Shown in pieces: positions 18,296-59,800 of a stretch of 64,000 bases of DNA; within the stretch, counting starts at the first letter, position 1; each line of letters starts with the position of its first letter. The notes beneath the pieces were generated by a model that was given only the letters and a program-made list of their open reading frames with translations, was not told the origin of the DNA and made no database searches. The position numbers and the translations under genes were made by a program. The stretch is taken from NCBI RefSeq assembly GCF_006345805.1, contig NW_021833079.1:1-64000 (forward strand). The letters run 5' to 3'. This stretch comes from Octopus sinensis. Taxonomy: Eukaryota.

Positions 18296-18629
18296 ATTTA
18301 TTTAATTACTCTTTCTTTTTGCTCATTTTCATTTAAAATTTTTTACCATTTCACTATTAATCTCATTTAAAAACTTATATTTTGTGATATTTGGTATATA
18401 AGATAGTGAAACCTGTGTTTTTGTTAACACGTAGCTGTTTAAAAATGGATAATCAAAGTTAAGTTATTGATTTTCCTGTTAGTGGTTTAGAATGACGTAG
18501 TTACGATTATAATTACTTTTGTTTTAAATAAGAAATATTTGGACTTGGGTCTTTACTTAAATAGGAAGAGTCCCCCCTTAATTGCCATTGCTTGGCGGTT
18601 TTGTTGTATCTTACAATATGACATAAAGA

Positions 18630-19252
18630 TTACGGATTCTCTGAAATTGAACACTCGATTCGATGACATTTTCCATCATTTCTTGGCATTTTCCATTGGT
18701 ACTCCTGATATTTTGCTCTGTTTTCGGATAGATATGACGGGGACTTGAGTTCGCTGATTTCTTTTTGCCATCGCAGCTTAAGCGAATCTAAAATTCCAAA
18801 TTTCATTCCATTTCCTTTTATTTTTGCCCAAAATTCAAACCTTCTGCAGGATAATCTGATTTTTCAGGAATCCAACTCATTGAATTTGTATTCCATTTTC
18901 TCTTTGGAGGAATTCGACTATTTTGAGATCTTCCGTTGTAATACTCTTCATACCAAGTGATATAAGGAGTATTAGGAGATTCTTGGTTGCCAAATTCAAA
19001 AAACTATTTCGATTAAAATAAAAATTATTAAAATACATTTCTATTAGTATTTTCCAACGGTCTTTTTACGCAGTTTCTTTTTAAAACGTTTGGAGAAAGA
19101 ATATTAAAGTCTTGGTCATATGTTGTATTACTTTTGTAATCATTTTTTATCCACTGATATATGATAGAGATTTATACCTGCAGTCTTTCTTCATACCAAT
19201 TTCCAATAAGAGCATTTTTTGTGTAACGATTTTTGTTAGAATCTAAAAACAT
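18630..19252 (-). CDS. CFAP107: CFAP107/C1orf158-like ciliary microtubule inner protein; 3 introns (24, 33, 26 nt); absent from the ORF track
   Basis: YTKNALIGNWYEER and RKWNTNSMSWIPEKSDYP match the family pattern GNWxEER ... R.W....L.W.PEKSD.P. Confidence 0.7.
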
Positions 19253-19621: not shown

Positions 19622-20969
19622 ATGAATAATATTGGTAAATATTTAACTCTGGGGGTCGCTTCTACTCTAGCATTCAGTTTATATCCAATTAAACACAATC
19701 CTACTAATTCTGAATCAACGAATGAAAAAATTTCTACAAAGTTAATCAATCGCGACTCTTACTCTGACATAATTTCAAAGTCCAAAGATTACTTACAATA
19801 TACTAAAGTCGTAAAATGTTGATTCTCTAGTTTTTTAGTTAAAATATGGACTTCCTTGTATAGCTATTTCCGTTTCCGTGAATGGTTCTATTGTTTGGGC
19901 AGAAGGTATTTTTATTTTTGAAGTGAGCAATTAGGGCTAGGATACTCTGATATCGAAAACCTAGTCGAGTGTAAACCAGAAACAGTTTTTAGAATTGGGA
20001 GCATCAGTAAACCCTTGACTGCTGCAATTGTCGGGAAATTAATACAGGAAGGACTTTTATCTTTAGACGATCCTATTTCGAAGTACAATATTGACTGGCC
20101 CGCTAAATTCATTGACGGAAATGAAGTAAAATATGTTCAAATTATATAACTGTGTTCTATTACGTGTCGACACCTCATGTCGCACTCGAGTGGAATCCGC
20201 CACTACAATAATCCAACTTCTGAAATTGACGAATTTCACATCAAACAGTGTTACAAGGACGTGAAAAGTGCACTTACCCTATTTAAGGATGATCCTTTAC
20301 TTTTTATTCCAGGTTGATTTTGAAATGATTTTGGTCCTGTATAGGAACGAGAACCCATTACAGTACTTTTGCTTGGACATTGGTATCAGGGATATGTGAG
20401 TCTGTAACAAAAAAATCGTTTCCATCACTTCTTAGAGAACTTTTTGATTCTCTTTCAATGAACGACACTTTTCTCGATAAAAACGACACAATAATTTTCC
20501 ACAGAACTCGGTTGTAATTGAAATTAGTACTATTACATATAGATATTACAAATTTAATTCTTGTAATGAAATCGTGAACTCACCATACGCTGAATCGACT
20601 CATAAATATGCGGGAGGTGGAATTTTGTCATCAGTTTTGGACATAAACGTGTTTGCCAATGCTATGCTGGAGAGTTATGAAGCTAATTCAAATAGTTATC
20701 TATCTGCTACCATTGTTTCTGAACTGTGGTCCCCACATTATAAATCAAAGAAAGACTATTTTGGACTTGGATGGTTTATTTCTGATCATCCACGTGCCCC
20801 AAAGTATATTTACCACACAGGATGTTCAGTTGGAGGCAGTTCTGTGGTACTAATACAACCTACGGATAAAAATTCACAAATTCGTGGAGTTGTATGTATA
20901 ATGACTAACGTTGATGGAATCAATTTACTTAGCAGTGCAAAAAGAATTGCTTCTGACTTTTTTAAATGA
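19622..20969 (+). CDS. LACTB: Serine beta-lactamase-like protein LACTB; 5 introns, one requiring a GT-TG junction (20126-20152)
   Basis: RIGSISKPLT (SxxK), HLMSHSSGIRHY, LFKDDPL, HYSTFAW, YAGGGILSSV, YHTG. Confidence 0.9.
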
Positions 20970-25852: not shown

Positions 25853-27500
25853 CAGTCCGACCTCTAAATGGGGCACTAAGTGCCTCAAATCAGAGGTTTC
25901 CCCAAAAAAGAGGTTTTTCAAAAAGCTCAATAAATAAAGAAAAAAAACATTATTTTTTAAAATAATCAGTTAATTTTTCTCCATATTTATATTTATTTTT
26001 AATTCCTAATGACACTTTCTTTCTGAATTCATAAAAATCATGAAGAAAATCTGGAATCAAATCAAAGATGTTTGTCTCTAAGTTTTCCATCAAACTTAAA
26101 ATTTGTGATATTGATGGTTCGCAGCTTATATTCTCATAGATATTGGATCATTATCTTCTATTTCATCAAAACATTCATCAATAACATTATTAAATATTTC
26201 TTCAGATGATTCATTTATGCAACTCGAGTCTGATGGAGATTGTCGAAAAACCTTTTGCCAGCAGTTATAAATAATATCCGCAGATACATTATTCCAAGCA
26301 TCTGAGATTATTGTTACCACTTGCCGCAAATTTAATTTGTATAAAAAATCAATTAGACAATTCAAATAATTATCCTTGAAATTTTTAATGATTCCAGCAT
26401 CCAATGGTTGAAGTATTGGTGTCGTATTTTTTGGTAAAAATAAAAAATCAACGTTGCTAAATGTCGATATTTTGTGGCAAGCAGCGTTATCTAATAACAT
26501 TAAGATTTTTCTTTTTTGAATAATCATTTTTTCATTAATTTTTTTGAGCCAGGATATAAAAATGTCTCTTGTCATCCACGCATTTTTGGACGAAGAGTAT
26601 AAAATTCCATAAATTTCGGGAGAAAATTTTTTGAAACATCTAGGATTTCTATATTTTCCGATTATTAATGGTTCAAATTTTTCTCCAGTGTAACTACAGC
26701 ATAGATGAAGAGTAACTTTATCTTTACTCCTTTTAAAGCCCCGTGCCGAATCACCAGTTTTCACGAATGATTTACGTGGGGTAAGTTTGATAAAAAGAGA
26801 AGTTTCGTCACAATTAAAAATGTTCTCCTTTCCATATTGTTCAACTTTGATATTTAATTCTGATAAAAAATTCAAAATTATCGCATGATCAGCAGATGCG
26901 GATTCGCCTGACAATGTTCGGAATTTTAATTCATGCCTCTGCTTGAATTTTCTAACCATCCATTTGAAGCTTTAAACTTGTTTAAGCCCATTCTCGAAAA
27001 AACAGTTAGGGAAATTTTTTTTAAAAGAGTTCCAGAAACTGGAACATTCTGATCCCTTAGACGCTGAAAAATATCAAGGACTTTTTCATCAAATCCGTTT
27101 TTATTTTCACTTAATGATGAGGAAAGAAATCCTTTTTTGATAAATGGAAGAATATTCTTTTTTATACGAAAAATAGTTCCCTTGCTAGTATTGTACATTA
27201 TGGATAATCTCCTCTCAGAATGTTCTTTCTTTAAAAGATGATCAGCAATCTTCAACTTGGTTTCATAATTCAAAGGCATTACACAAGAAATTTAAAATGA
27301 AACGTGTCTTAAAATATTTATTTTTTAAATTGGTATAATTAATTTTATTTAATAAAAAATCAATGACCCAAATAGGAATGTTAAAATTAATTGATTTTTG
27401 ATAATTTGGTTAAAAAAATTTATAATGCCCCAAAACAGAGTTTTCCCCAAAAAAGAGGTGCCCCACCCCTGGAGGTGCGCCCCAATTAGAGGTCGGATTG
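25853..27500 (-). mobile_element. pogo/Tigger transposon, 1648 bp; transposase broken by a 1-nt deletion near 26950
   Basis: TIR cagtccgacctctaaatggggc / (rc) caatccgacctctaattggggc; TA on both flanks; CENP-B HTH plus FNCDET, LLDNAACH, QPLDAGII. Confidence 0.95.
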
Positions 27501-29281: not shown

Positions 29282-30849
29282 TATATTAAATTGAATTTAT
29301 TGAATTTATTTTAAATTCGGTTTACCAGAAAGTACAAAACTACTTTCAAAGTAATATGTTTTATATCAAATTACAATTAAAATATATTTAATTAATTTTA
29401 ATTTAATTTATATTATTTCATAGTTAATGATTTATTAAGTCAAGTAGAAGGTTCCATGCATCCAATATGCACCCGGATTGACGAGTGATACCGTCGCGGA
29501 ACCGGATGTCCTCATCGGCCGCACAACAAAAAGTGGGGGGGGGGCAAGATGGACTAGAAGAGACACATGACTTTATTTAGATTAGTTAGTTCCTTGGTTA
29601 CATGTTTTTTTTCTTCTTGATTTTTCTATAAAAAAATGTGTGGCCAGCCTGGGCGAAATGGACGATATGTCGTTTACATTCGCGGCAGGGCTATTTACGA
29701 TTTTTTACGAAGTAGCATTAAATTTGATTAATACTTGTTTGAGATAACTATACTTAAAATTGAATCGAGATGGTTTGTGAGCAGATATCTCTTCTGATAG
29801 TACGCTCTAACTCTTTCTTGATCACGTTAGCCTCTAAATTAAAGTTACTCATAAACTTTAATGAGACAATTCAAGAATAATTTTTACATTAAAGTAATTC
29901 TATCAAATTTATAAATTGATTGTTCAATTTGATCTTGTCAGAAAACGTCATATAGAATGATAAATTTATTAGACAAGTTTAGTCACCATAATAGTTCCTA
30001 GATATTGTTATCCTCTAAATAATGTGCACTTTTTTGGGTGTGAAACAGTTTTGCCAATCTGACTTTAATCTGATGTGGCAGATGATCAGTGATGCTTTGT
30101 GTGAACTAGGAAATTATGCATTATAAAGAATCTCAAGCATTTGACCTCAATAGATTTAAGATAAATATTTTGAGAGGAATCCAGTGACAGAAATAATATT
30201 GTTTCAGTCGATGTATATTTGGAAAAGGATATCTGAACACTCGGACGTACGATGCTCATGAAAAACTGGTTACATTTTACTTTGAACAAATCTTGATATT
30301 TTAATTTTTGATTAACTTCAAAGATACTTAACAAAAGATATTAAAATTAATTATTTTTGTAGTCTCGTCATGGGTCGTGTCCATAATTTCCTTTGACATA
30401 TTTTATCTATTAAATAAAAATTCTTGCTTTACCTCACCTCGATTATTTGATAAATGTTGATTATTCCAGATTGAAGATTCGAATTTATCCAGCCACAACT
30501 AAGGGTTTGTTCTACAGTATTTTAAAAAGTCAAACCTATCTCTAATGTGTTATGATAGGTTTCCATACAAGCAGAGGAAATACCTTATTTGATATTTGGA
30601 CCTGCTCAGACACATTCTCGTAAGAAAATTTCGATCCTGGGCACGCGTCAAGCCAAGCGGGGGATCGCAAAATTATTAAATACGGCCACATTTCAAACTC
30701 GTTGTTTTCTACTCCAACCGTTTAAAATCCTCCAGGATCTTCCGCCTCAAGACGCTTCGCTTTTTTCGCTCGGTCGACGGATTTCAAGGATAAGACACGA
30801 CTCAAGGGAGTCATCTTGGCTCTTGGAACGTCTGTCGATCGATTTTTAA

Positions 30850-32045
30850 CGAGTATCCAAACACTTACCAACTTCCCAAACCCAGCATGGTTTTAAACCA
30901 TTGCACCCAAAAACTACTAATTTAAAAACACTTTCCCAATTCGTCCTGAACGTCTTCAATGAAAAGAGACCGCTAAAACGAACAGTCCTATTTTTTGTCG
31001 ACATCTCTAAGGCCTTTGACAGCGTCTCTAAATGTAGTCTCAGCAACAAAATTGACATGACCGACCTAAGCTTAAACTACAAATCCTGTCTTGGAAACTT
31101 CTTATAGGGCTTGAGTTACGTCTCCCTCACAGACCATTTTTCTAAGCAACTTTTTTCCAAGCGAGGTATCTCGAGGTTCCGTGCTGTCTTCAACCATGTT
31201 CAACCTTTATTTGCACGACTTTCCAGCCAAAGACCCAAAAAACTTCTTACGCAGACATTATTATTGACTCAAATGCGAAAACTACAAAGCCGTTTCCTTC
31301 AACATTCAGCAAACACTATACCTCGGTGAGAATTGGCTTATCGAAAAAAGGCTCGAAGCTTTATTCTCCCTTGGTCACCCTATTATCTTTGGGCAGAAAC
31401 AATCAAACACACATCCCAAGCTATCTCTCTTTGATTCTGACCCTCCGCTATCCAAGCACCCCACTGTTCTCGGATTTACCTTCGATCCAACCATGTTCTT
31501 CAACAAACATTTTTCAAACATCTCGGACAAGGCAAACAGGCATATAAACATTTTAAAAACGATAAGTGGTCGCATCACTGGTGCCCAGAACCACTCCTCA
31601 AATGAGTTTACAAATGATACCTCCCCCCAGTTCTATGTTACGCAAGTCTCAGCTGAGCTCCTTGTCTATCTACAAGGTCCACTGTAGGACTTCAATCAGT
31701 AAAAAACAAGACAATACGCATTAGATCAACACCCATCACCTGTACTGTGAAACCAATTTTCTCCTGATAGAAAAACATCTTAATATGAAAAGAACACAAA
31801 TCCTATTTACTTGCATAAATCCTACCATTTTTGCACTGGTCTAAAATGCTATCTCTCCTTTATGTAACCTCTGCTGTGTTGACGACCACTCAGCCAATCA
31901 CCTTTTCCGCTGTCCCGATCATCTTCCTATCCGTAAAAAATTTTTGTTCACTCCCAGAAATCCTTTGGGAGCAACCTGTGAAAACGTTGTTGTTTCTGCT
32001 AGCCGCTGGTCTCAGACCCTGACCGCGGTTATGCAACAACAAACT
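30850..32045 (+). mobile_element. Degenerate Jockey/I-like LINE 3' half ending in (caa)n
   Basis: FVDISKAFDSV, LGFTFDPTMFFNKH...ANRHINILK; 3' end ...gaccgcggttatgcaacaacaaac. Confidence 0.75.
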
Positions 32046-32099
32046 AGTCTAAAATGCTGAAAATTCCTCTATAACTCTAAGTTAACCAACATTCAAAAA

Positions 32100-34200
32100 A
32101 ATAACTTTTTTTAATTCATTAAGTACATGGTTGCGCTTGTGCCGGGCTTTACTTCAGGTTATTCTTTCTATCATTTTCTTAACTAACTGCCTCCAAGAAC
32201 CACGGTTCTTTGCGGTTTCTCTAAAGATATCCAGATCATCTCTATTTTTTAACTTTCGTCTTAAATTGGTCAGGTCCTTGTGTAGGACCTCTGGCAAAGT
32301 CAAACGAGGTCTTCTACGGAAAGAGTTGTTCACTTCTAGGCAGAAATAGTTCCCCGTTGCTATGTTGGCAAGTGTCATTCGCTCTTCCGAGGGATGAGAC
32401 GAAATAGACTCCATCTTGATTCAATTGTATCCAGGCTCAATGGTCTTGCATTACATATTTTTATAAATTCTAATTTGTTATTTTCTTTGGGTAGTTGATG
32501 CCAGGCAACAATCGGAGTTGTTTACGATGGAAGAAATCTAGTTTTTCCATTAAAGTTTGCGAGACTCCCTAGGTTTTGCAGCATTGTACATTAGGAGCGG
32601 TTTTACGAAGGCATTGTATAGTCTTACACACAAATGTGTGCTGATTTGTTTACGATAAATCCAGAGTGCTCCCATTCTTCTAAAGGCCGCGACGGTCAAC
32701 ATTTTTTTGTTAGTGATATCTTCAGGATTTCCAATCAGGGACCAAAATTTTGTTTACGTATCTTTATTTTTCATCAGTTCGTGTTAATTCGTGACGTATG
32801 ATTGTTGTTTCACTCTTCTCAGCATTAATTTTGATGAACCATTTTTCTAGCTTTCTGGCATTCTTGTCCATATGTAGTTTAATGTTTTTTCGTCTCGGAA
32901 TATATTTTACCATCTGCATAAATCATTTCAGTTTGAGCTAAGCTAAAGTCTTTGAGTGCCGTCTCCAGATATGTCACAAAAGGTACCGGTGACAGGGAAT
33001 CCCACTGCGGTACCCCAAAAGTTGTCTTGAATGGGACAGATTTTACATTACCAAGACGTCAACAACGTAGTTCCGAGTAATATAAGGATCATTCTGACAC
33101 TGTCCTCGTCAACCAAATTCTCTAAGATATTGGAGAAGTGGTACATCTGAATCCGTCCTTGATGACTTGATTATCTTAATCTCTTCATTGCGCGCTATTG
33201 GTCTTGAAGTCAATTATCATAAATCTGAAATTATAAACATCAATTACGACAAACCATTTTTCCGATATTCTTCGTTCCTTCAACTCGCTTCTATCCAGAA
33301 TCCAAGTCATCATGCCATCGAATCTCAAGGAAACAATATGTGATGTCCCTTTTGATGACCTTGGCTGGAAGCAAGCAATCCTTCCGGTTAGAGTTCTCTT
33401 CGGCTGTCAAATGCTGGTCCGCTAATTCCTTCGAAGTACCTAATGATTTAGGACGCAAACAGCGATAATAGGACGTAAGTTTTTGCTCCTCAAGTGTAAA
33501 TTTGATCAACCAGGCTTATCTGCTTGCGGGATCTCAAAAGTATTCAGGAGCCTGGCTGATAGCTATCCCAATGGCGTCAGTCGGGACATTACTGGATTAA
33601 AAATGCCTCCGCATCGCAGTTTCTCTGGGCCTAGGATTAAACATCTGCCGTGAGCATCAATGCCGCTCCGGTCAGACGAATGACACCCTAGGATTATCTT
33701 GCCGTTATAGCGCTGGGTGTTTCCCTCGCCACTTTGAGCTTAATGATGTGGTGAGCCGCTCCATGGCATCTGCGTGTATTCCCTAATGTGCTGGAACCAG
33801 TCGAGTTGGATCGCAAAGATGGAAAGCGCCCAGATGGCATGACAACATTCTCATTCGATCACGGAACATGTCTCATTTGGAACACGACATGCTCCAACAC
33901 ATTCTCGGCATATAATCTAATCTCGCCAGTAGCTGTCTCGGCTCGGCGGCAAGACACGTAAATCTCGCATAAAAAGAAATTTTTGTCCCGGGAAAAAACC
34001 ACATATTTTCACCAATAGCCGTTGAAACATCAAGAGTCATCGGCCCAGAATCGCTCTCTTTCTATGTCGATTGGGGACGAAGATTATAGGGGAAAAATCT
34101 AAACCAGACTCATAATCTTTTCCAAAAAGTCTCCTTTCCGATCGCCTGGGGAACTATCAGGCCACCTTATGCGCCGGCAATTTTTAATTAAAAAATTGAG
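32100..34200 (-). mobile_element. Degenerate RTE-clade retrotransposon
   Basis: DSLSPVPFVTYLE...IYAD RT core near 32900-33010; RLYNAFVKPLLMYN and RWSLFRHI C-terminal motifs; many stops and frameshifts. Confidence 0.7.
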
Positions 34201-34485: not shown

Positions 34486-37331
<2,846 letters not shown>

Positions 37332-37858: not shown

Positions 37859-39093
37859 GGTACATATGTAGTAGTTGGCGGCCACTTTTTAGCGAATTTA
37901 AAAAAACTATATTTTTTTTGGTGAATAATTACCTTTTTAAATAATATTACTATAAAAAAATTAATTATTTTTATACAAAATTATTAATTATTTTTATTTT
38001 AGTTTTGATTCTGGGGGACAATGTAAGGCAATGCACTCCATGATTGTTTCAAATTCTTTCTTTTTGGCTGTCTGTCGCCAAATGAACTCCGTAAAATAAC
38101 TATTAAGGTGTTGTCTGACTGTTCCCCTTTGTTTTCTATTACGCCATTTGGCGCTACTCCACATTCTAAGGAATAATTATATAATTAGGAAACCTTTCAA
38201 TATGTTGGGTGTGTGCACCCGTAGTTGGATCAACAAAACAATATCTGTGATTCACTTGCAGGTGCTGATATCCTGCATCCTGAAGATCTTTTGTTGAATA
38301 ACCCTTCCAGCAGTCTGATATGAGAATGGTGCCTTCTTCTACATTCTCAAGAATAGCCTTCGTAAGGGTCTTCATTGTTCTGTCAGGTATTGCTTCTAAG
38401 AAGCATGGTTCGTTTCTCTGCAGATTCCGCCGAAAACCCATTGCTCAGGCAACATTCTGCCTCTGTTGTATTTCCTTTTTGAAAAATGACTTTCGTCAAT
38501 TTCCACAATCATTCCTTCACCGCCTATTATATTATAAATTTACGCACACCTATTTTGGATCTCTGACGAGATGTCAATGATAGCATGCAAATTTCACGCA
38601 TGTAGATTGACCAGTCCACGGTTGTATGTGAAGCCCAACCAAGATTTTCCATGCATATCTCCATAGAAGATATATTTTTTGCCCACAGGTAGACAAACCG
38701 GATTATCTTCGAATGGTACTTTGGTTCCTGCTAACCACGTTCCTGTTGAGTTTTAATGATATAAATACCAGTTTTTAGACTCGATTTACTTCGACAGCCC
38801 CTTCTGTAGCAATTCCAAGCCGGAGAGCTGCCAATGTTTAAAGTCATTTGGTGTCCGTTGCGACACACTTTTTTTTTGGGATGATTCCTCTGGATTGCAT
38901 GAAATTGATAGCTTCTGACATATTTGTGGGTAGATTGAATAGATTGACCTCACTTCTCATTTAAATTAAAGTAGCGTGGGATTTTATTATTTTTATATTG
39001 TATTATTTTTAATTATATATTTTTTTTAACTAAAAAAAATATAGTTTTTTTAAAATTCGCTAAAAAGTGGCCGCCAACTACTACATATGTACC
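37859..39093 (-). mobile_element. Full-length Merlin transposon (1235 bp); transposase 38960-37994 with three microintrons and two 1-nt frameshifts
   Basis: 41-bp perfect TIR ggtacatatgtagtagttggcggccactttttagcgaattt (about 60 bp with one indel); perfect 8-bp TSD tatttgct; [34 protein letters not shown]. Confidence 0.95.
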
Positions 39094-40056
39094 TATTTGC
39101 TTTGAATCTGAATAGATCAAGTACATTTTCCGGAGTCTCTTGCTTAATAACATTTAGCAGCATTGTGAATGCGCATTCCGCATTGTTTATAACTTGTTGA
39201 TCATCCAAATGTTCCATAAATGTTCGCTGCAGTCCTCTTCATCACTACTGTTATCATCCTAGAAACTCTCCAAAATCGTATTTTCCACAATATCGGAATT
39301 AATCAGACTTTCTTCGATGTCCTCTTTTTCCCGACAGTCATATTCCAAAGCTTTTTCAAAGCAATGTTGTATTGAAGTGTCTGTAATCTCGTCCCATGCC
39401 AATTTCGAACATGAAATAGCATCCAATATTGTGATTCCCTTTATTGCTTCATCTATTTGCCCTGCAGGATTTTTTATCATAGATAATTGTTTTCATAATC
39501 CAGTTATTAAAATGATTCTTAAATGCCTTTATTATCCCTTGGTCACATGGCTGAATTAAGGAACTTGTATTTTTGGAAAAAATATTACGTCGACGTTTGA
39601 AAGTTGAGAGAAACAGCATGACAAGTTGCATTGTCAATAACAATGCTATTTTCCTTCTTTTCTCTCTCATTTCCTCGTTAAATCGAGATAACCAATTTTC
39701 AAAAATATTTTTTGTCATCCAGGCTTTGCACGAAGCATCATATTCAATGCCAATTTCTCTCAGATTCACACCTTTTATACTCTTGGTGACTTCGTACGCC
39801 CATTATAAGCGGTTTATATTTTTCTCCTGTGTAACTGCAACACAAAAGAAGTGTCATACGTTCTTTTCTTATTTTATGTCCGCTGTGTGACTCATTTTTT
39901 TCAACAAAACTCCTTTTGGAAACAGCTTTATAAAATAATGCAGTTTATCACAGTTGAAAATGTTTTCTCCCCCATAGTTTTCAAGCAAATCATTGAAAGT
40001 TGATTGGAAGTTTTCCGCACCTTCTTTATCAGCTGATCGTGATTCGCCATGTAATA

Positions 40057-40658
40057 TGTCGCGAGCGCAGCGAGCACGCGAGCGCGACGCGCACATTGAC
40101 AGCTAACAAGCCTGTTCATCAACAAATATATTTATTAAATTATTTAAAATTTTAACATGATTTAAAATTAAAATTGAAATAACTTAAGTTTCCATTGAAT
40201 CCCATAAAATAATTATAAGTAGACCTTAATAGAAAAAGTAAAATCAATGAATACTGAACGCTAATTTTGTTTAGGTTGTGAGGGGGGTAATAATTTGACA
40301 AATCTCATTGCTATTTTTTCGTTTTAATCTCTAAAATTAGGTCTTCTAATCAAAAATGAACTGTGCAGACAGGCTTGCTCCTTCAGAAGATTCTTGTTTT
40401 GACATTTTTATAAATTATGAAGCATTTAGATTTTTCTCATTATTCTAAAATCAATTATAAATTTAAAATATTTTTTTATTTATGAAATCGGTTTTAAAGC
40501 TCATTCTGCTTTGGCATCGATTTTAATTTTTGTTATCGAATATATTTAATCCCAAATACAAGCCTGGGTATTTGTCAATTTATAGATTTTTGTGATTGAT
40601 CGGATCTAGAAATTGAGTGGTTGCTCGCTGCGCTCGCGTGCTCGCTGCGCTCGCGACA
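40057..40658. mobile_element. 602-bp non-autonomous TIR element (MITE) with TGT...ACA ends
   Basis: 29-bp perfect TIR tgtcgcgagcgcagcgagcacgcgagcgc; taata duplicated on both sides; removing it restores pogo codons IKFRI|LHGES. Confidence 0.9.
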
Positions 40659-43686: not shown

Positions 43687-44864
43687 ATGCTAAGATTTCT
43701 TCATATATTTCATAAAGTCAGATTATCAAGAAATATAAGACCGATTCCAATAGAACATGTGCATTTGAATTATGAAAACCAAAAAATACATGATCCAGAA
43801 ATTCGTGCGTTTTTGCACCAAATAAATAAAAACAACAATTATTCAATTCCAAATCATATTCCAATAACTTATAGTGGTACAAATGATATAAAAATACTGA
43901 CAAAAATACTATTAAAATTAGGTAAATCTCGATTAACAAGTATTTTTACTATTATTCATATTTTGGCCTCGTCGTCCTGACCCAAATGGTTGGATATCTT
44001 GTGGCCTGTGACGCCATCAATTTATCAACACTTGCGCTTACATCCCTGGGTACCTTTCTCACATCTTCTTCTGCTGCTTCGCTAAACCAAGTAATATTCC
44101 TAGAAAATAGCCCGTCATTTAGCTCTTGGAAATACCTTTTGACTCTCAAATGAATCGAACTAAGGACAGAGTTCTTGTTCAGTCTAATATTTCGTATTTT
44201 TTGGTCATTTCTAGAACATTTAGACCAGAGGGGACGCTAGCATTTGCTCTGGCGACTGGAATTAGTGGAATTGTTATTCTCTCAACTCTTGTTAGTTCGG
44301 CGACTGCTATGTTGGCTTTTGGAAATCTAATTCTTTATTCATTCATATATACGCCGATGAAGAGATACAGTGTGGCTAATACATTTGTTGGCTCATTCGT
44401 GGGAGCAATTCCTCCAATAATTGGATGGCATGCTGCTACAGGGAGTTTTGATTCTGGTTTAGACTTTTGGGGTGATTTTAGGTTGCTTTGTGCTTGGGGC
44501 AATTTTATACTTTTGGCAACTTCCTCATTTTAATTCTCTGAGTTGGAATTATAAGGAAGATTATTCTTTGGGTGGGTATAGACTGATGTCTTTTCTGTAT
44601 CCCGATAAGTGCAGGGCCACATCTTTGAGGCACAGTTGCTATTTGGCAATTACATGTCTTGTTGCACCGATTATGGCTTGTGGTAATGCCTATTTTTCTG
44701 TTTTGAGCTGCCCTTTGAATGTTTATTTAATTTATTTGTCTCATCGGTTTTATAAAAATCCAACTCGGGGGACTTCAAGAAAACTATTTTTCTTTTCGTT
44801 GGGTCATTTGCCGTTATTATTGTTGGTTCTTACGCTAACAAAATACATTCATTTTGGGATGTAG
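43687..44864 (+). CDS. COX10: Protoheme IX farnesyltransferase (heme O synthase); 4 introns, the first requiring GT-TG (43940-43965)
   Basis: KSRLT|SLVVLT, SAASLNQ, FDSQMNRTKDRVL, YTPMKR, VGAIPPIIGW, WQLPHFNSL, YSLGGYRLM, RKLFFFSL. Confidence 0.92.
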
Positions 44865-45414: not shown

Positions 45415-46993
45415 CTAATCACAGGGATGTAGTTTGAAAGTGAAGTACGTGGGTTCACTTACAATTTTTCTAACATTCATTTTTATTTTTGATGGTGTAA
45501 CAATACGATCTGAATAGTCCTCACTGATTAAGAAATTCTGCAAATGTCCAGTAATTTCTTCACTTGCATCATTTTTTTCACTTTTTGATAAAACTGATTC
45601 TATTTTAATATTGTAATGTTCAAACAAACGAATTTTTTCAAAATGAATTGTTGCCAAATGAAATATAATTGTAGTTAACTGTTTTGTTTGAATTCCGCAC
45701 ATATTGCAATTGTATACCTTTTTAAAGTTATACGTAGTTATATTGTATAGTTTTGCAGTCGCATAAATTGTTTCTTAATTATTATTTGAGTGTAAATGTA
45801 TATTTACTTTTTTGGACTCCGTTCATGTTTATTATATAATTTCCATTATCCATGTCTTTACTCTTGTTGATCATTTTTATCGTGTCAAACTCAACAGACT
45901 GGCACTCCAAATTATTATTCGGACTATTTACTATTTCTTGATTGAAAATATTCTCCTTTGATATTCCATGGCGGTTTTTCATATGTTTTTTTAAAAAATA
46001 TTTATTGCATACCTCTTTTCCGCATTCTTCGCACTGTACTCTCATTGAAAAATTAATTTCACTATTTGTTTTCTTTTGTGGCTTCATTAAATCTGTGAAA
46101 ATGTTTTCTGTTTTAACCACAGGTTCTATGAAAATATTTTTGTCACAATAAGTATTCTGCTCAAGTGACTCGTTTGTATCAGATTTGTTTATTTCCTAAA
46201 TTAGTTTAGTAAAAAATTGATTTAATTATATTTAATGAATTAACTTAAAAATAGATTTTTAATTAAGAAATACATTTTTAGTTTGAGTCGTCTTCCAAGA
46301 AAAATCATTGTCAATATCTAAATATTTATTACATTATTAAATCATTGTAGAATCGCTATTTTGTGCTATATAAATTGTAAATTATACTATAAACAATTAA
46401 AAAACCAATTAATTATTTAAAAAACTGCTGCGATTTTCTTGTTGACTTGAACAAGTAGCTGCATGCAAATTACCTCTATTCTCACTGTCATTTTTTAAAC
46501 CATGTTTATTTCTGCAATGTTCGCGAAAAAAATATTTATTACAGTATTGTCGATCACATATTTTGCAATATGCGTCTGTATTAATAGTTTTTTCGTACTT
46601 GAAATTTGTATTTGGTGAAAAATTTGAAAAATTAGGAATTGGTAAAACAAATGGAAAATATAATGGATAAGGTATAGGCGAATTATGCAAAAACTGATTG
46701 AAATTTGTAATTGTTTCAGTAGTAACTGATTCAGGAATTTCCATTGATTTTAAATTTGAATTTTTCACCTTTTCAGTTAGAGAATCAGTTTCAGTGGAAA
46801 GGCATTGTTCATTGTTTTTATTATTTTCTAGAACTTCACTGTCTTGTAAAAAAGTATCAGACATTATATTAAAACTATAAAAATTGTCTGTCGTTCTGTT
46901 AATATGTTTCTTAAACAAAATATTACCGATATTATGAAATAAATAGTTCGTCAATATAAAATCACTTGAAACTATCTTACTTAAATATGTCAA
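45415..46993 (-). CDS. C2H2 zinc-finger protein (CxxC..CNKYF..H...H type); middle exon structure unresolved
   Basis: CKICDRQYCNKYFFREHCRNKH; CEECGKEVCNKYFLKKHMKNRH; CNMCG...HLATIH. Confidence 0.75.
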
Positions 46994-52037: not shown

Positions 52038-52654
52038 TTAAAGAACAGAACAACAATGATTGCGTTTATCAGACTTTTCGATACGTTTATTTGCCCTGAT
52101 TAACCTCACAAGTTCAATAAATGCCTAAATCACATTCAACAAGCCAGATCAACCCTATCGACATTCTGAGCTGTTTTTGCTGAAGTTTCAAAAACAGGAA
52201 CATTGAGAGTATCTGGAATCTTCCATGATGATTTAAGGTCACATTTATTCCCGACTATAACAACTGGCATAGTTTTAGGACTGTGATATTGCTGGATTCG
52301 GGAGTAAAGAGATTGAGCCCATTCAAAGGTCTGTGGTTCTGCCAATGAGTAGACCAGTAGAAATCCATCTCCCTTCCTCATGTACATCTCATAGACACTA
52401 TAAAATTGTTCGGTCCCGGCAGTGTCGAGGATCTCGAGGCAGCATTCTCGATTGTCAATTACTATAATAGATTTATTTAAATATAATTATTTACTTTTTT
52501 TCCTGCAATAAGAATCTTCTATTGTCGGGTCGTATTTATGAACAAATATTTCTTGTGTAAATCGAATGGTCTGTAAAAGTTTAAACATAATTACGACCAG
52601 TGCACTTTTCCCAACACCTCCACTTCCCATGACCACAATATTATGCTCTTCCAT
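52038..52654 (-). CDS. RAP: Rap-subfamily small GTPase; 3 introns (27, 33, 29 nt)
   Basis: [27 protein letters not shown] (Thr61, Rap signature), GNKCDL, ETSAK, C-terminal CCSVL CAAX box. Confidence 0.88.
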
Positions 52655-55282: not shown

Positions 55283-58200
55283 CTAAGTTTCTTTCTTTTT
55301 GATGTTGTGGACACACTTATTTGGTGATAAATCTTTTTTATTTTTTTTCCAGTACAAGAGTCTTTTCCCAAGGTTCAACTTTGTTTTTATAAGAAACAAG
55401 CATGCTCTCAAGGGTTTTTTTATAGTAAGTAATTGAATGTATGCATGTATTCTCTTACTGATATTAAGCAAACGTGCATATTGTAGAAATTTTTGGATTG
55501 AGTCCATCCCATTTTAGCACAATTGACGGAGCCGACCCCGAGTGAGTGGCAGGCACCGAAAGCGAAGAACCTGAGGAAGAAGGCAATGCCGACACTTCCA
55601 TCTCCACTTGATGCGTCGGATATCTTGCCAACTCCAGCCGAGCCAATACAGAAAAAGCCCCCTTTACGAAAACGGGCGGCGCTCAGGCACGAGGGCAGCC
55701 GCGTTCCAAATCAAGTGTGAGCGTGATAACGCTTATCAATGCCCGGTCTCTCATGAGACGGGCAACGGAGCTGAGGTCCCTTCTGACCTTGGCAAAGACA
55801 GATGTCCTAATTGTGAACGAAACCAAAATGAAAGGGCCTCGGCAGATCAAATTTGAAGGCTATAGATCCCTCCACATTCCATGGAGGTCGGGGGCGATTG
55901 CGGGAACGGGATCCTCGCTTTACTACAAAGCCGACATTGTTGTAAAGAACTTGAGGATCCTTGAAGAGAACCGATGCGAACTGATCGCACTAGAACTCCT
56001 AACTTCCATTGGATGGATAACAATCGGTGGAATGTACTCGAAGGACCTCAGAACTACCCTGAAGTGATCAGGAAGTTCTTTGAGGATAATGAGATGGCCA
56101 TTCTTGCGGGAGATCTCAACGCCAAAAATACCGCTTATGGATGCGAGACCTCTAACCAAGATGGTCGGGCTTTACTGAGGATCGCAAGGAAATATGACCT
56201 TAATGTCTGGACTTCTGAGGAACTTAATCATTTCTGCTTCAGTGGAGGTGATCGCCTCGGACTATTTCTTTCTTCCGCGTCTGTGAGCCTTTTTGCGACA
56301 GGCCCCGGATAGAAATGCGGACTGGGAGTGACCATCTGCCCCAATCAATGTTGTTGCGGAACATCTACGGAGTTGGTATCAGATCTCTTCACGGGATACG
56401 ACTTGTCCCCTGTGCAATGGCCCATGTTCGCCATATTCATGGGTGCAGCTTTGGAACCTCTCTCCCACATGCATCTGTCCACGAGTGAAAGTATTGATCA
56501 TCTTGATATGGCCATACGAAAGCATGTGGTGGCCTTTCTGGACAGATTCGCTTCTAAAAAACATATGAAATCCCAGGGATCTTGCGCGAAGAGGTCCGAA
56601 ACTAGACTATCTGAGCTAGTCAGAGACAAGGCGCGACTGGAAAGCAAAAGAAGGAGGTGTTTTGAATCGGAGGACTCTGGAAGTCTAAAGGCCCGAATCA
56701 ACACCCTGAAGAGTCGGATCGACGAGCTGACTAAAGCTAACACAGATGAGGCATGGAAGAGAGAATGCTTAAAACTCAACAAGAAAAATCCTAAATTCTG
56801 GAAACTATACAAAATAATGAACGGGACGGAAGCGAAAGGAGAAGAAATCATTCTTAAATCGGTGGATGGAGGCTTTGTTCCTACTGAGGAAGTCCCGGAG
56901 GTCTTCCGCCAGCAGCTAGCAGGGATTCAGGAGGTGGACCCTTCGTCTATCCTGCCTCTGAAAATATTCGAGGAGTCGACCCGAAATTCCCGCTCAAAAC
57001 TTGTTTTGGATGGACCCTTGTGCAGAGAAATAACCACGGAAGAGACGTTCGAAGCAATCAGAGGTTGCAAGAACAACGCTCCTGGATTTGACTTCATCCC
57101 TATGGAGGTATTCAAGAAGGCACCCGGATGCTTGCTTCGTATTCTGGTGAAACTATTCAATGCCAGTTGGGACAATGGTCACGTCCCACCTAGCTGGAAC
57201 GAACAATCGTCCGAATGATCCCAAAACCTGGAAAACCAAATACGCAGGCAGGAAGTTATAGGCCAATTAGCCTTATCTGCACAACGTCGAGGATAATGGA
57301 AAGAATTATTTTCAATCGTTTATCGGCTTACGTGGAACAAAATAATATACTCGCGGAGGAACAGTGGGGTTTTAGACCTGGTCGATCAACCGGTCACTGT
57401 TTCTCGCTTCTTGAGGAAGAACTGACTCGGGCCAAACAACATAAAGCCTGCCTAACGGCGGTCTGCCTGGACGTCTGCAAGGCCTTTGACAGTGTCTGGC
57501 ACTTGGGGTTGTTAGATAAAGTAGCGGAGTTGGGTGCTGGGCGAAAAACTGTCGGATGGCTTAAGGACTTCTTGTGCGAGAGAAAATCGTTCATTCGTTG
57601 TGGAAATTTGCTATCGAAGGCCGTGAATCTGAGGAGAGGTGTTCCTCAGGGATCGGTTCTCAGCCCCTTGCTCTTTAATATATTTCTGGCCGACGTCCCG
57701 AAACCACATTTTCCTACGAGCAGACTAATTATCTACGCAGACGATATCTTGGTTACGGATGTCTCGACGTGGGGACCCCGACACAGAAGAAGGCTGTCCT
57801 GGAGCAGACTAGAACCGTACTTGGAGGAACTTGAAATCTGGTGCAATGGTAAGGCTTGAATCTCGCTCTGGACAAAAGTACCATTTGTTGGATTTCAATG
57901 GGTCGTGACAAAAAACCGACTTTCGAGGATTATGGGAACCTGATTATATCGAAGAACCTACGTTACCTGGAGTAACTATAGACCCCACCGGGTCATACAA
58001 ACCCCATGTGCATGCAAAGCGGAAACAAGGAGCGAAAATCCTAAAAGGACTGAGGCGTTTTTGTCTGAGCGCAGAAACGTTTCTACACATCTACCAGACT
58101 TGTGTTCAGCCACTAATAATCTATGGCTCGGAGGGCTAGTACCAAACTGATGAAAGGGACCTTCTAATCGCCAAACTCGAAAAAACCAGACGATTTGCCA

Positions 58201-58700
58201 TCAAACTGGCATTCGGCCTGGAGCTCAGCAGTCCGCTGGAAGACCTGCATGAGCGGAGTGTTGACACGATTGACGCGATCCTGGCAAAAACTCGAACTCG
58301 CTGAGGGAGATAAGACAGTCTCCTGGGGCAAAACCGAAGTTGAGACCTTCGTGGCTCTCGTTATCAAGCCCCCTAAGCTCTAATTCCTCGGCCACTTTTC
58401 TTTTGGACCTATTGTAATAAATAAACCATATTCATACTATTTTTACTCTTTCATGATAACTTATTCTTGCTCTTTCGATAAAACATCATATTTTTTCATT
58501 TTTTCAATCTCCACTTTCTTTAAATTTTGGGAAGATTTTATCTCAGCTTCAACGGAAAAAATTTGATTTCTTATTTGTATAAAACAAACAAATCGGGTTT
58601 GTTATGTTCCAAGACGAAGTCATTCTTTATAAATATGATTTCAACCTTCTCATTCGTCAATACAGATTCTACCAAATGAGTATTGAGTTTCTTGTCATTC
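55283..58700 (-). mobile_element. Second RLE-element copy, split by the plus-strand LINE (pieces 58420-58700 and 55283-55520)
   Basis: THLVESVLTNEKVEI...HNKPDLFVL...EKMKKYDVL...RVKIV resumes as IVLKWDGL...NISKRIHAYIQ on the far side of the LINE. Confidence 0.6.
55523..58420 (+). mobile_element. APE + RT LINE (Jockey/CR1/I-type), several frameshifts, taataaataaa tail
   Basis: ITLINARSL, VNETK, ILAGDLNAK; PKPGK...SYRPISL, EQWGFRPGRST, LDVCKAFDSVWH, GVPQGSVLSPLLFN, YADD. Confidence 0.9.
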
Positions 58701-59074
58701 CTGAGTAAAAAATCTGGTCCAGTAAATAAAATGAAAAAATTTGGCACTCACCGAAAGTTTTTTATTAATTAAAACTGATTCGTCAAGTGGATTGTGCTTC
58801 AAGTATTTTTCAATAGTGACCAGATGGGTTTTTCCAGCATTTCTTCCTAACGAATCGAGAAGCTTCTGTTGCAAACACTATTTCGGTTTTTTAAGTCCAC
58901 AAGGAATCCAAAAAGCATACTTTCACTTCGAAAGGAAATTGAAGTCAATCCTCTTCTAAAATTGTTAAGGGAGAGGTACAATCTCTGTTTGTTTGCCGGT
59001 CGCATATGTATCTTGTATTTCATTAATTTTCTCCGGATTGTATCGTCAACTATAATTAAAGACAAATTTTTTTG

Positions 59075-59800
59075 CCGTCGATCTTCAGCTGACTTGGAAC
59101 CACTCCTCGACCAACACAGATTGCCCTGTTTCCGTTCTTCCTGTCAGCCATACTCAGACTCCTGGCTTAATGTACTCCCTCCTTCGCCTTTGTATACTGT
59201 TCTCGATAGGGATTCACTCCGTTTGGGTATCTGCAATCGCCTTGAACTCCCTGTCTGCAGACCTCACCCCTGTCGTTGTGGGGATAAAGTTGACGCCTTT
59301 GGGCTACATCCTCTGTCTTGTCGAATGAGTGCCGGCCGATTTCCTCGGCACCCTGAAATTAACAATCTAATTCACAAAGCTCTGGAAAGAGCTGGTTTCC
59401 TTTCAATTCTGCAACCGACAGGTTTCGACCTTGAAGATGCAAAATGTCCCGACGGTCATACGCTTTTCGCTTTTGAATCCGGGAAGCAGCTTGTTTGGGA
59501 CGTTACCTGTGCCGAATCTTTTGCCAAGGAAGCCTTGAATTCCACTGCTTGTAGACCTGGCTCGTCAGCCGACAAGGCCGAATCCAGGAAACTGACTAAA
59601 TACGAGGATTTGTGCGATCTCTTTTGCTTTCGGCAATTGCCGTTGAGACTTCCTGTGTTTTCGGGGCAAAGAAACTTGGCCGTCTGTGCACCCATCGCTT
59701 CAGAGATCCCAGTGAATTTATATTCCTTATTCAGAGGATCTTGCTGGATGTTTTACGCGGGAATTGTCTCTCAATCCCGCGAGCCGGTACTTAATAACTA
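59075..59800 (+). mobile_element. CRE-like retrotransposon 3' fragment with CCHC knuckle and RLE domain
   Basis: CRCG..VDAFGLHPLSC...GRFPRH..IN, PDG.T...WDVT, KLTKYEDL, QRILLDVLRGN. Confidence 0.85.

What the first reader, a model, noticed from the sequence alone, without database searches (positions are those of the whole stretch)
43940..43965. Second, independent GT...TG microintron in COX10
LLKLGKSRLT joins the conserved SLVVLTQMVGY only by removing the 26 nt gtatttttactattattcatattttg (a|gc gives Ser). There is no AG in the interval, unspliced reading hits TGA at 43978, and the only nearby GT-AG option removes KSRLT and shifts the frame. Two obligatory TG acceptors among roughly 90 introns, both at 26-27 nt and in otherwise intact conserved genes, suggest a spliceosome that selects 3' splice sites largely by distance from the donor, with relaxed AG recognition. 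The mechanism is inference.
Basis: partly seen in the sequence, partly recalled or inferred. Interest (0 to 1): 0.85.

Follow-up and report, generated by a model that had tools for sequence, protein, structure and literature searches.

The report
Tiny COX10 intron ending in TG
In a parasite (dicyemid) scaffold hidden in an octopus genome assembly, a 26-base intron in the conserved COX10 gene ends in TG instead of the near-universal AG; it sits at an ancient intron position, so it is either a rare sole TG splice acceptor or a one-base assembly error, and no RNA data could be reached to decide.

Summary
Removing exactly 43940-43965 (GT...TG, 26 nt) joins LGKSRLT to SLVVLTQMVGY without a gap. No GT-AG or GC-AG solution exists, and there is no AG from 43941 to 44089. 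The interval lies at the same position and phase as an ordinary U2-type GT-AG intron in nemertean and limpet COX10, as do the other three introns, so it is a real, ancestral intron. A second case (20126-20152, 27 nt, LACTB-like gene) is also confirmed, against about 87 short GT-AG introns.

The window is the first 64 kb of VCDQ01007963.1 from the Octopus sinensis assembly. It is almost certainly a dicyemid contaminant.

Two results favour a genuine TG acceptor. COX10 exon 2 contains no AG at all (4.5 expected, P about 0.003). The 13.7 kb of gene exons need no frameshift repair.

"First AG at least 23 nt from the donor" predicts 80 of 86 acceptors, but AG still beats upstream TGs in 11-12 introns.

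No transcript or second assembly could be reached, so a missing A or a T-for-A miscall remains a live rival. My estimates: real TG acceptor about 0.6, assembly error about 0.2, defective allele about 0.1.

The parts
43687..43939 (+). COX10 exon 1: ATG to ...LLKLGKSRLT plus the first base of codon 85
   Evidence: ORF. The TIGR01473 heme o synthase model aligns from residue 74, 11 residues before the junction. L78, K80, L83 and T84 are invariant in alignment A1.
43940..43965 (+). COX10 intron 1: 26 nt, GT...TG, phase 1 (equivalent boundaries 43941-43966, TA..GG)
   Evidence: Same position and phase as the GT-AG introns of Lineus (358 nt) and Patella (557 nt) COX10. 15% G+C between exons of 20% and 50%. 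With the last two bases ignored, it scores at the 94th percentile of intron-likeness; 0.27% of random GT 26-mers score as well.
43966..44090 (+). COX10 exon 2: 125 nt, SLVVLTQMVGY...SLNQ, with no AG dinucleotide at all
   Evidence: 0 AG where synonymous resampling expects 4.5 (P = 0.0025-0.004). It is the most AG-depleted of 62 exons. The orthologous 125-nt exons hold 3 and 7 AG.
44091..44122 (+). COX10 intron 2: 32 nt, GT-AG, phase 0
   Evidence: Position and phase conserved with Lineus and Patella.
44123..44193 (+). COX10 exon 3
44194..44223 (+). COX10 intron 3: 30 nt, GT-AG, phase 2, in frame and stop-free
   Evidence: Re-modelled from the conserved phase-2 position in the Ser codon of (L)SP. 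Same choice as the RefSeq model P0121. Coordinates.
44224..44456 (+). COX10 exon 4
44457..44481 (+). COX10 intron 4: 25 nt, GT-AG, phase 1
   Evidence: Position and phase conserved.
44482..44864 (+). COX10 exon 5 with stop TAG; the full product is 354 aa
   Evidence: UbiA Pfam domain 4.8e-46. TIGR01473 scores 256.8 bits against a cut-off of 210.3.
20126..20152 (+). Second non-AG intron: 27 nt, GT...TG, phase 0, internal in-frame TAA, in a LACTB-like gene (CDS 19622-20969)
   Evidence: No AG from 20127 to 20188. Removing 27 nt gives a gap-free alignment to human LACTB 7v21 across the junction and to two further homologs, P0126 and P0136. End points at 24 nt (AA) or 30 nt (GT) would each add a one-residue indel.

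Best explanation
The 26 bases are a genuine U2-type spliceosomal intron inherited from the spiralian ancestor. It has shrunk to the dicyemid minimum, and its 3' end is TG in the genome.

It is most likely removed at that TG. In these 24-29-nt introns the branch adenosine sits about 7-10 nt from the 3' end. Exon ligation therefore picks its site within a very narrow window that opens about 22-24 nt from the donor. Normally the first AG in that window wins. Where no AG is in reach, a TG can dock instead, because it keeps the terminal G that pairs with the 5' splice-site G.

Such branch-proximal sites fall in the regime where, in yeast, second-step proofreading is relaxed. A first step that does not need U2AF35 to read AG would explain why a sole TG works here when it never does in human.

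Shown: the anatomy, the conserved intron position, the lack of any AG, the positional rule, and the AG-free downstream exon. Inferred: that splicing really occurs at TG, and the molecular reason.
For: - Removing 43940-43965 is the only solution with a GT donor that restores the invariant K-x-R-L-T-x-L-V-V motif without a gap.
- All four COX10 introns match Lineus longissimus and Patella caerulea COX10 in position and phase (1, 0, 2, 1). The orthologous introns there are ordinary GT-AG U2 introns.
- The heme o synthase model TIGR01473 aligns from residue 74, across the junction at residue 85.
- The interval is strongly intron-like: 94th percentile with the last two bases ignored, and 0.27% of random GT 26-mers do as well.
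- A second non-AG intron also ends in TG at 27 nt. That end point is the one giving a gapless alignment to human LACTB.
- Exon 2 has 0 AG against 4.5 expected from its own protein and the window's codon usage (P = 0.0025-0.004). It ranks first of 62 exons, and its orthologs hold 3 and 7 AG. This is what selection against competing AGs downstream of a weak acceptor would produce, and what an assembly error would not.
- 13.7 kb of gene exons with 307 homopolymer runs of 4 or more need no frameshift repair, which argues for a low indel error rate.
- 'First AG at least 23 nt from the donor' predicts 80 of 86 acceptors. Positions -7 to -10 are A-rich.
- TG is the commonest non-AG acceptor in fly (23 of 60,223 introns; PMC4528330) and is a validated alternative acceptor in 36 human genes (PMC2374985).
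- In yeast, branch-proximal non-YAG sites, including 'BG', escape Prp22 proofreading (PMC11651659).
Against: - No transcript, read or second assembly of this organism could be reached.
- The scaffold comes from a PacBio-based octopus assembly in which the parasite is a contaminant.
- One missing A, or a T called for A, at each of the two sites would restore ordinary TAG acceptors.
- In human, TG acceptors are never the sole acceptor and need an AG nearby (PMC2374985). In fly, 22 of 23 have a canonical alternative (PMC4528330).
- 11-12 canonical introns in the window skip a TG for a later AG.
- The LACTB case shows no striking AG depletion: the next AG is 36 nt away, against a median of 18.
- There are only two cases.
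- I framed the AG-depletion test after seeing the AG-free stretch.
Confidence: 0.6

Rival explanations
1. Assembly or consensus error. The true genome has an ordinary TAG acceptor at both sites. The contig either lost one A (ttttAg to ttttg; aactAg to aactg) or carries T for A. The introns are then plain GT-AG of 26-28 nt.
For: - The mRNA would be identical under either correction (logic).
- 60 of 87 introns have T at -3, so deleting the A of TAG would usually leave TG.
- The scaffold is a contaminant in a PacBio-based assembly (method as cited in PMC10125929).
- There is no independent sequence to check against.
Against: - 13.7 kb of exons with 307 homopolymer runs of 4 or more show no frameshift. 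That puts an upper bound near 2e-4 indels per base, or about 0.02 expected errors at the 89 '-2' positions, yet two are seen.
- Neither site is a homopolymer of A.
- An error does not explain why exon 2 lacks any AG (P about 0.003).
- No error is seen at any donor or at any terminal G.
Confidence: 0.2
2. The TG is real in this genome but is a splice-site-destroying mutation. It would be a null or heterozygous allele captured by the assembly, or the start of pseudogenisation, and the transcript is not productively spliced.
For: - D. japonicum heterozygosity is 1.24% (PMC6736024).
- Dicyemids multiply clonally inside a host, so recessive lesions could persist. This point is inference.
Against: - Both genes are otherwise intact, full-length and conserved: TIGR01473 scores above its cut-off, and the alignment to human LACTB runs over residues 50-398.
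- Two independent lesions would both have to be A to T, out of six possible acceptor-breaking substitutions.
- No comparable lesion is seen at any donor.
- The AG-free exon 2 implies long-standing constraint, not a recent hit.
Confidence: 0.12
3. Exon 1 is not part of the gene. Translation starts at Met-91 (MVGYL..., 43986), as in the RefSeq model, so no intron needs to be removed here.
For: NCBI's automatic model P0121 starts at that Met.
Against: - P0121 also reads through intron 4 into a stop, so it is not a reliable model.
- It lacks the invariant L-x-K-x-R-L-T-x-L-V-V segment, which is encoded in frame just upstream and belongs to the family model.
- The intron position is conserved in other spiralians.
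Confidence: 0.03
4. A non-U2 intron: either U12-type, where the 3' end is chosen by distance and tolerates non-AG ends, or an IRE1/HAC1-type 26-nt unconventional intron.
For: - U12 introns tolerate varied 3' dinucleotides (PMC1557818, Table 2).
- The fly unconventional Xbp1 intron is about the same size (23 nt), with CA-TG borders (PMC4528330).
Against: - The 5' end GTATTTTT lacks the U12 /RTATCCTT box, and there is no TCCTTAAC branch box.
- The orthologous introns are U2-type with polypyrimidine tracts.
- Neither border has the CNG|NNG loop motif of IRE1 sites (read directly).
- COX10 is not a stress-response mRNA.
Confidence: 0.02

Closest known systems
GT-TG introns of human and Drosophila (TG as an alternative 3' splice site; Szafranski et al. 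2007, PMC2374985; FlyBase 'rule-benders', PMC4528330)
   Same: U2-type introns with a normal GT donor and a TG acceptor. TG is the most frequent non-AG acceptor in fly, and the terminal G is kept.
   Different: - There, TG is nearly always an alternative to an AG a few bases away. It is never the sole acceptor in human, and 22 of 23 fly cases have a canonical alternative. The frequency is about 0.02-0.04%.
- Here there is no AG for 24 nt upstream and 124 nt downstream, so TG would be the only acceptor.
- Here 2 of about 89 introns are affected, and the intron is 26 nt long.
Dicyemid ultra-short introns (Dicyema japonicum and Dicyema sp.; PMC2222250, PMC6543705, PMC6736024, PMC13644364)
   Same: Length 24-29 nt, a reduced 'GTa' donor, no polypyrimidine tract, weak A-rich patch upstream of the 3' end, and intron positions conserved with other animals.
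   Different: Published descriptions and annotations (AUGUSTUS or BRAKER based) report AG acceptors only. A non-AG acceptor class is not described in the papers I could read.
Branch-point-proximal, non-YAG 3' splice sites activated in yeast prp18 or fyv6 mutants (PMC11651659)
   Same: Acceptors close to the branch point (under about 21 nt) that do not need Prp22 and escape its proofreading. 'BG' ends are among them.
   Different: In yeast these are cryptic sites seen in mutants. Here the site would be the normal, productive one in a wild-type animal.
SPF45-dependent, U2AF-independent splicing of human short introns (bioRxiv 10.1101/784868, also held as PMC8363638)
   Same: Short introns with truncated polypyrimidine tracts are spliced without U2AF. 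This would remove the first-step need for AG.
   Different: I know this paper from its title and abstract only. Those human introns are about 56 nt. No dicyemid factor was examined here.

Membership tests
U2-type spliceosomal intron (GT-AG class) | GT at the 5' end | tested here: met
   GTA at 43940-43942. 40 of 87 window introns start with GTA.
U2-type spliceosomal intron (GT-AG class) | AG at the 3' end | tested here: not met
   TG at 43964-43965. No AG from 43941 to 44089.
U2-type spliceosomal intron (GT-AG class) | Branch adenosine at the usual distance from the 3' end | tested here: inconclusive
   Window introns are A-rich at -7 to -10. This intron has A at -8 and -6, but no branch mapping is possible.
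U2-type spliceosomal intron (GT-AG class) | Orthologous to an intron at the same position and phase in related species | tested here: met
   A phase-1 intron follows ...RLT in Lineus and Patella COX10. The other three introns match too.
U2-type spliceosomal intron (GT-AG class) | Removed from the mRNA in vivo | not testable with these tools
   No dicyemid transcript was found in the protein collection or the contig scans.
GT-TG alternative-acceptor introns (human/fly type) | TG used as acceptor in a U2-type context | tested here: inconclusive
   The sequence fits. Usage is not shown.
GT-TG alternative-acceptor introns (human/fly type) | A canonical AG acceptor in tandem within a few bases | tested here: not met
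   Nearest AGs are at 43939/40 (the donor border) and 44090/91, which is 124 nt downstream.
U12-type intron | 5' box /RTATCCTT and branch box TCCTTAAC | tested here: not met
   The 5' end is GTATTTTTAC and there is no branch box. Orthologous introns are U2-type.
IRE1/HAC1-type unconventional intron | CNG|NNG loops at both cleavage sites | tested here: not met
   The borders are caa|gta and ttg|gcc. This was judged by reading the sequence; no folding was run.
Dicyemid ultra-short intron | Length about 22-30 nt, AT-rich, GTa donor, in a dicyemid genome | tested here: met
   26 nt and 15% G+C; the window mode is 24-29 nt. Dicyemid origin is inferred from three facts: the scaffold comes from an Octopus sinensis assembly, introns this short are known in animals only from dicyemids and myxobolids (PMC13644364), and O. 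sinensis hosts D. japonicum (PMC6736024). No named dicyemid sequence was matched.
COX10 / heme O synthase (protoheme IX farnesyltransferase) | Scores above the curated cut-off of the equivalog model over its full length | tested here: met
   TIGR01473 scores 256.8 bits against a cut-off of 210.3, over model positions 2-280 of 281. UbiA Pfam 4.8e-46. About 53% identity to mollusc COX10.

The most novel reading that the evidence does not exclude
Dicyemid spliceosomes define the 3' end of their 24-29-nt introns mainly by geometry, through a window opening about 23 nt from the donor and 7-10 nt past the branch point, and without an AG-dependent first step. TG can then serve as the sole, constitutive acceptor in a percent-level fraction of introns genome-wide. 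Selection has purged competing AGs from the exons downstream of such sites. Standard GT-AG-only annotation has hidden this class.
Probability: 0.45. Interest if true: 0.72.

Novelty: new variant of a known kind. Interest (0 to 1): 0.55.

Why it matters
If real, these would be the first constitutive TG acceptors with no AG partner. Human and fly surveys found TG essentially only next to an AG. The human authors concluded that AG is indispensable for the first step of splicing.

A natural system that dispenses with that AG would let one ask which part of 3' splice-site recognition is geometric and which is base-specific. It would also show which factors (U2AF35, SLU7, PRP18, PRP22, PRP8) changed when introns shrank to the physical minimum.

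There are two practical points:
- GT-AG-only gene finders would truncate or break about 2% of intron-containing junctions in dicyemid genomes.
- RefSeq currently carries a truncated, mis-spliced parasite COX10 labelled as an octopus protein.

Tried and rejected
1. Transcript or second-assembly evidence. Two protein searches centred on the junctions returned only the RefSeq model P0121 and distant homologs. Exact look-ups of the exon-1 ORF and of the intronless 425-aa ORF found nothing. Two metagenome scans, with a spliced/unspliced junction pattern and with an exon-2 pattern, found nothing.

2. P0124 and its contigs L002-L005 (Logan SRR24390608 and others). This is an AT-rich organism's COX10 with no intron at this site. 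I could not tell whether it is a dicyemid and dropped it.

3. My first spliced-ORF finder, with a flat intron penalty, could bridge almost any gap with any dinucleotide and was uninformative about TG specificity. A second version with a trained intron model gave usable gene models, but it fused neighbouring genes through spurious 60-80-nt introns. The census therefore uses only introns of 45 nt or less inside 14 recognised genes.

4. An apparent GT..TG at 36778-36807 (- strand) is really part of a 69-nt GT-AG intron in the PKN gene.

5. My first model of COX10 intron 3 (33 nt) was wrong. Intron-position conservation corrected it to 30 nt.

6. U12-type and IRE1-type readings were rejected on sequence.

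7. Rfam and tRNA scans of the window found nothing, so no snRNA gene is available here.

8. The supplement of PMC13644364 is not held as text.

Full report
**What the window is.**
The window is AT-rich, about 33% G+C. Its genes are animal genes interrupted by introns of 24-29 nt. The COX10 translation matches mollusc and other spiralian COX10 at about 53% identity. A search with the N-terminal 146 residues returned one 100%-identical protein, P0121. RefSeq calls it 'protoheme IX farnesyltransferase, mitochondrial-like [Octopus sinensis]'. Its contig is VCDQ01007963.1 (136,813 bp, assembly GCA_006345805.1), and the window coordinates equal the record coordinates.

Among animals, introns this short are reported only from dicyemids and myxobolid myxozoans (PMC13644364). 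Dicyema japonicum lives in the renal sac of O. sinensis (PMC6736024). I therefore take the scaffold to be a dicyemid contaminant. This is an inference, since no named dicyemid sequence was available to match.

**The observation.**
The 26 bases at 43940-43965 are gtatttttactattattcatattttg. Unspliced, the exon-1 frame runs into TGA at 43978-43980. Removing exactly these 26 bases gives ...LLKLGKSRLT-S-LVVLTQMVGY....

An exhaustive enumeration shows three things:
- No GT-AG or GC-AG pair keeps both conserved halves.
- The nearby GT-AG (43922-43940, 19 nt) is out of frame.
- Only GT..TG, or its one-base slide TA..GG, gives this mRNA.

There is no AG between the two border-straddling AGs at 43939/40 and 44090/91. 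In an alignment with 12 animal COX10 proteins the junction is gap-free. L78, K80, L83 and T84 on the exon-1 side and L86, V87, V88, T90 and G94 on the exon-2 side are invariant. The curated heme o synthase model TIGR01473 scores 256.8 bits against a cut-off of 210.3. It aligns from residue 74, eleven residues before the junction.

**It is a real, ancestral intron.**
I fetched the COX10 loci of the nemertean Lineus longissimus and the limpet Patella caerulea and located their splice junctions exactly. Both have a phase-1 intron immediately after ...S-K-x-R-L-T. This is the same position and phase as the 26-nt interval.

The other three dicyemid introns also coincide with theirs:
- phase 0 after NQ;
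- phase 2 in the Ser codon of (L)SP;
- phase 1 in the Gly codon after D-x.

This comparison corrected my first model of intron 3 to 44194-44223, 30 nt. The final CDS encodes 354 residues. The orthologous introns are ordinary U2-type GT-AG introns with polypyrimidine tracts, not U12-type.

With its last two bases ignored, the 26-mer scores at the 94th percentile of the window's introns on a donor, composition, 3'-context and length model. Only 0.27% of random GT-starting 26-mers do as well.

**The second case and the census.**
The LACTB-like gene (CDS 19622-20969, 399 residues) needs an in-frame interval with an internal TAA to be removed after ...KFIDGNE. There is no AG from 20127 to 20188. 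Removing 27 nt (20126-20152, GT..TG) gives a gapless alignment to human LACTB (7v21) across the junction and to two further homologs, P0126 and P0136. End points at 24 nt (AA) or 30 nt (GT) would each cost a one-residue indel, so TG is favoured but not proven.

A trained spliced-ORF finder yields about 87 short GT-AG introns in 14 recognisable genes. The gene families are:
- Pfam hits: Tesmin/TSO1-like CXC domain, cofilin/ADF, chromo domain, leucine-rich repeats, annexin, class I/II aminotransferase, hexokinase, a protein kinase with an HR1 repeat, Ras, a weak below-threshold Smg8/Smg9 match, and CFAP107.
- Other searches: LACTB and COX10.
- The fourteenth, a putative zinc-finger gene at 45463-46933 (- strand), had no Pfam hit.

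The intron length mode is 24-29 nt, and T is at -3 in 60 of 87. So 2 of about 89 introns lack AG, and both read TG.

**How acceptors are chosen here.**
42 of 87 introns contain an internal AG, some only 3-8 nt upstream of the one used. The rule 'first AG whose G is at least 23 nt from the donor' predicts 80 of 86 acceptors. Positions -7 to -10 are A-rich and G-poor, which fits a branch point there. PMC13644364 reports a similar weak A-rich patch upstream of the 3' AG in D. japonicum introns.

In 11-12 introns a TG inside the permitted window is passed over for a later AG. AG recognition is therefore intact, and TG looks like a fall-back. In both TG introns the TG is the first TG in the window (G at 26 and 27), and the first AG is far away (G at 152 and 65).

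**Real TG or artefact?**
I could reach no independent reads or transcripts. Two indirect results favour a genuine, long-standing TG.

First, COX10 exon 2 (125 nt) has no AG at all.
- Resampling synonymous codons for its own protein with the window's codon usage expects 4.5 AG and gives P(0) = 0.0025-0.004.
- It is the most AG-depleted of 62 exons of 90 nt or more.
- The orthologous 125-nt exons of Lineus and Patella hold 3 and 7 AG.

Selection against competing AGs downstream of a weak acceptor would produce this pattern. A miscalled base would not. I note that I framed the test after seeing the AG-free stretch.

Second, 13.7 kb of gene exons containing 307 homopolymer runs of 4 or more require no frameshift repair. 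This bounds the indel error rate near 2e-4 per base. About 0.02 errors would then be expected at the 89 '-2' positions, against two observed.

Against this, deleting the A of a TAG acceptor would leave TG at both sites, and the scaffold is a contaminant in a PacBio-based assembly. I put the real TG acceptor at about 0.6, assembly error at about 0.2, a defective allele at about 0.1, and the rest at about 0.05 to 0.1.

**Comparison with what is known.**
TG is the best-documented non-AG acceptor. [quoted passage not shown] The authors inferred that AG is needed at step I and that TG can be chosen at step II (PMC2374985). In Drosophila, GT-TG is the commonest non-canonical pair, 23 of 60,223 introns, and 22 of the 23 have a similar canonical alternative (PMC4528330).

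In yeast, branch-proximal sites under about 21 nt have a relaxed need for Prp22. When PRP18 or FYV6 is deleted, non-YAG ends, including 'BG', are used (PMC11651659). Every dicyemid intron necessarily falls in that proximal regime. The abstract of bioRxiv 10.1101/784868 (also PMC8363638) reports that a subset of short human introns is spliced with SPF45 and without U2AF.

The dicyemid cases would differ in being sole acceptors with no AG in reach, in 26-27-nt introns, at about 2% frequency. That makes them a new variant of a known kind, if confirmed.

**Verdict.**
The interval is a bona fide ancestral intron whose assembled 3' end is TG. The decisive data already exist publicly (D. japonicum RNA-seq, TSA and genome) but were out of reach of these tools.

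Noticed in passing
window 1-64000 (= VCDQ01007963.1:1-64000): The scaffold sits in the Octopus sinensis assembly but has 24-29-nt introns and about 33% G+C. It is almost certainly a dicyemid parasite contaminant. RefSeq protein P0121, labelled as octopus COX10, starts at Met-91 and reads through intron 4 into a stop, so it is a truncated, mis-spliced parasite gene.
   Followed up: partly
43966-44090 (+): COX10 exon 2 contains no AG dinucleotide (4.5 expected, P about 0.003). It is the most AG-depleted of 62 exons in the window, and the orthologous exons of two other spiralians have 3 and 7.
   Followed up: yes
all 86 short introns of the census: 'First AG whose G is at least 23 nt from the donor' predicts 80 of 86 acceptors. 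AGs only 3-8 nt upstream of the used site are skipped, and positions -7 to -10 are A-rich.
   Followed up: partly
about 35570-35596 (-), 52571-52594 (-), 44194-44223 (+): In-frame, stop-free introns of 27, 24 and 30 nt in the PKN-like kinase, Ras and COX10 genes. A plain ORF reader would translate straight through them. The kinase one carries a yeast-like TACTAAG box.
   Followed up: partly
55500-59800 (both strands), 30500-34000 (+), 26126-27279 (-), 38003-38834 (-), 39452-40102 (-): Transposable elements make up much of the window: a G+C-rich (about 47%) LINE with endonuclease and reverse transcriptase domains, reverse-transcriptase-like fragments (by eye only), a pogo-like DDE_1 transposase, a second DDE-like fragment (by eye only), and an ISXO2/IS1595-like DDE transposase. 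This agrees with the 49% repeat content reported for D. japonicum.
   Followed up: partly
18-1295 (-) and 18531-19243 (-): An intronless 425-aa ORF with a mitochondrial ribosomal protein S30 (PDCD9) domain, and a CFAP107 (cilia and flagella associated protein) homolog with four 24-33-nt introns. Neither has an exact counterpart on record in the protein collection.
   Followed up: no
L002:3154-4527 (Logan SRR24390608): An AT-rich unidentified eukaryote has a COX10 sharing DSQMNRTKDRVLV with the window protein, but it has no intron at the RLT|x position and a gap of roughly 370 nt further on. The organism was not determined.
   Followed up: no
16637 (+): The gene model with the aminotransferase domain (serine palmitoyltransferase-like by eye) begins without a Met, so its first exon was not found. 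One or more upstream exons, possibly joined by an atypical intron, remain unmodelled.
   Followed up: no
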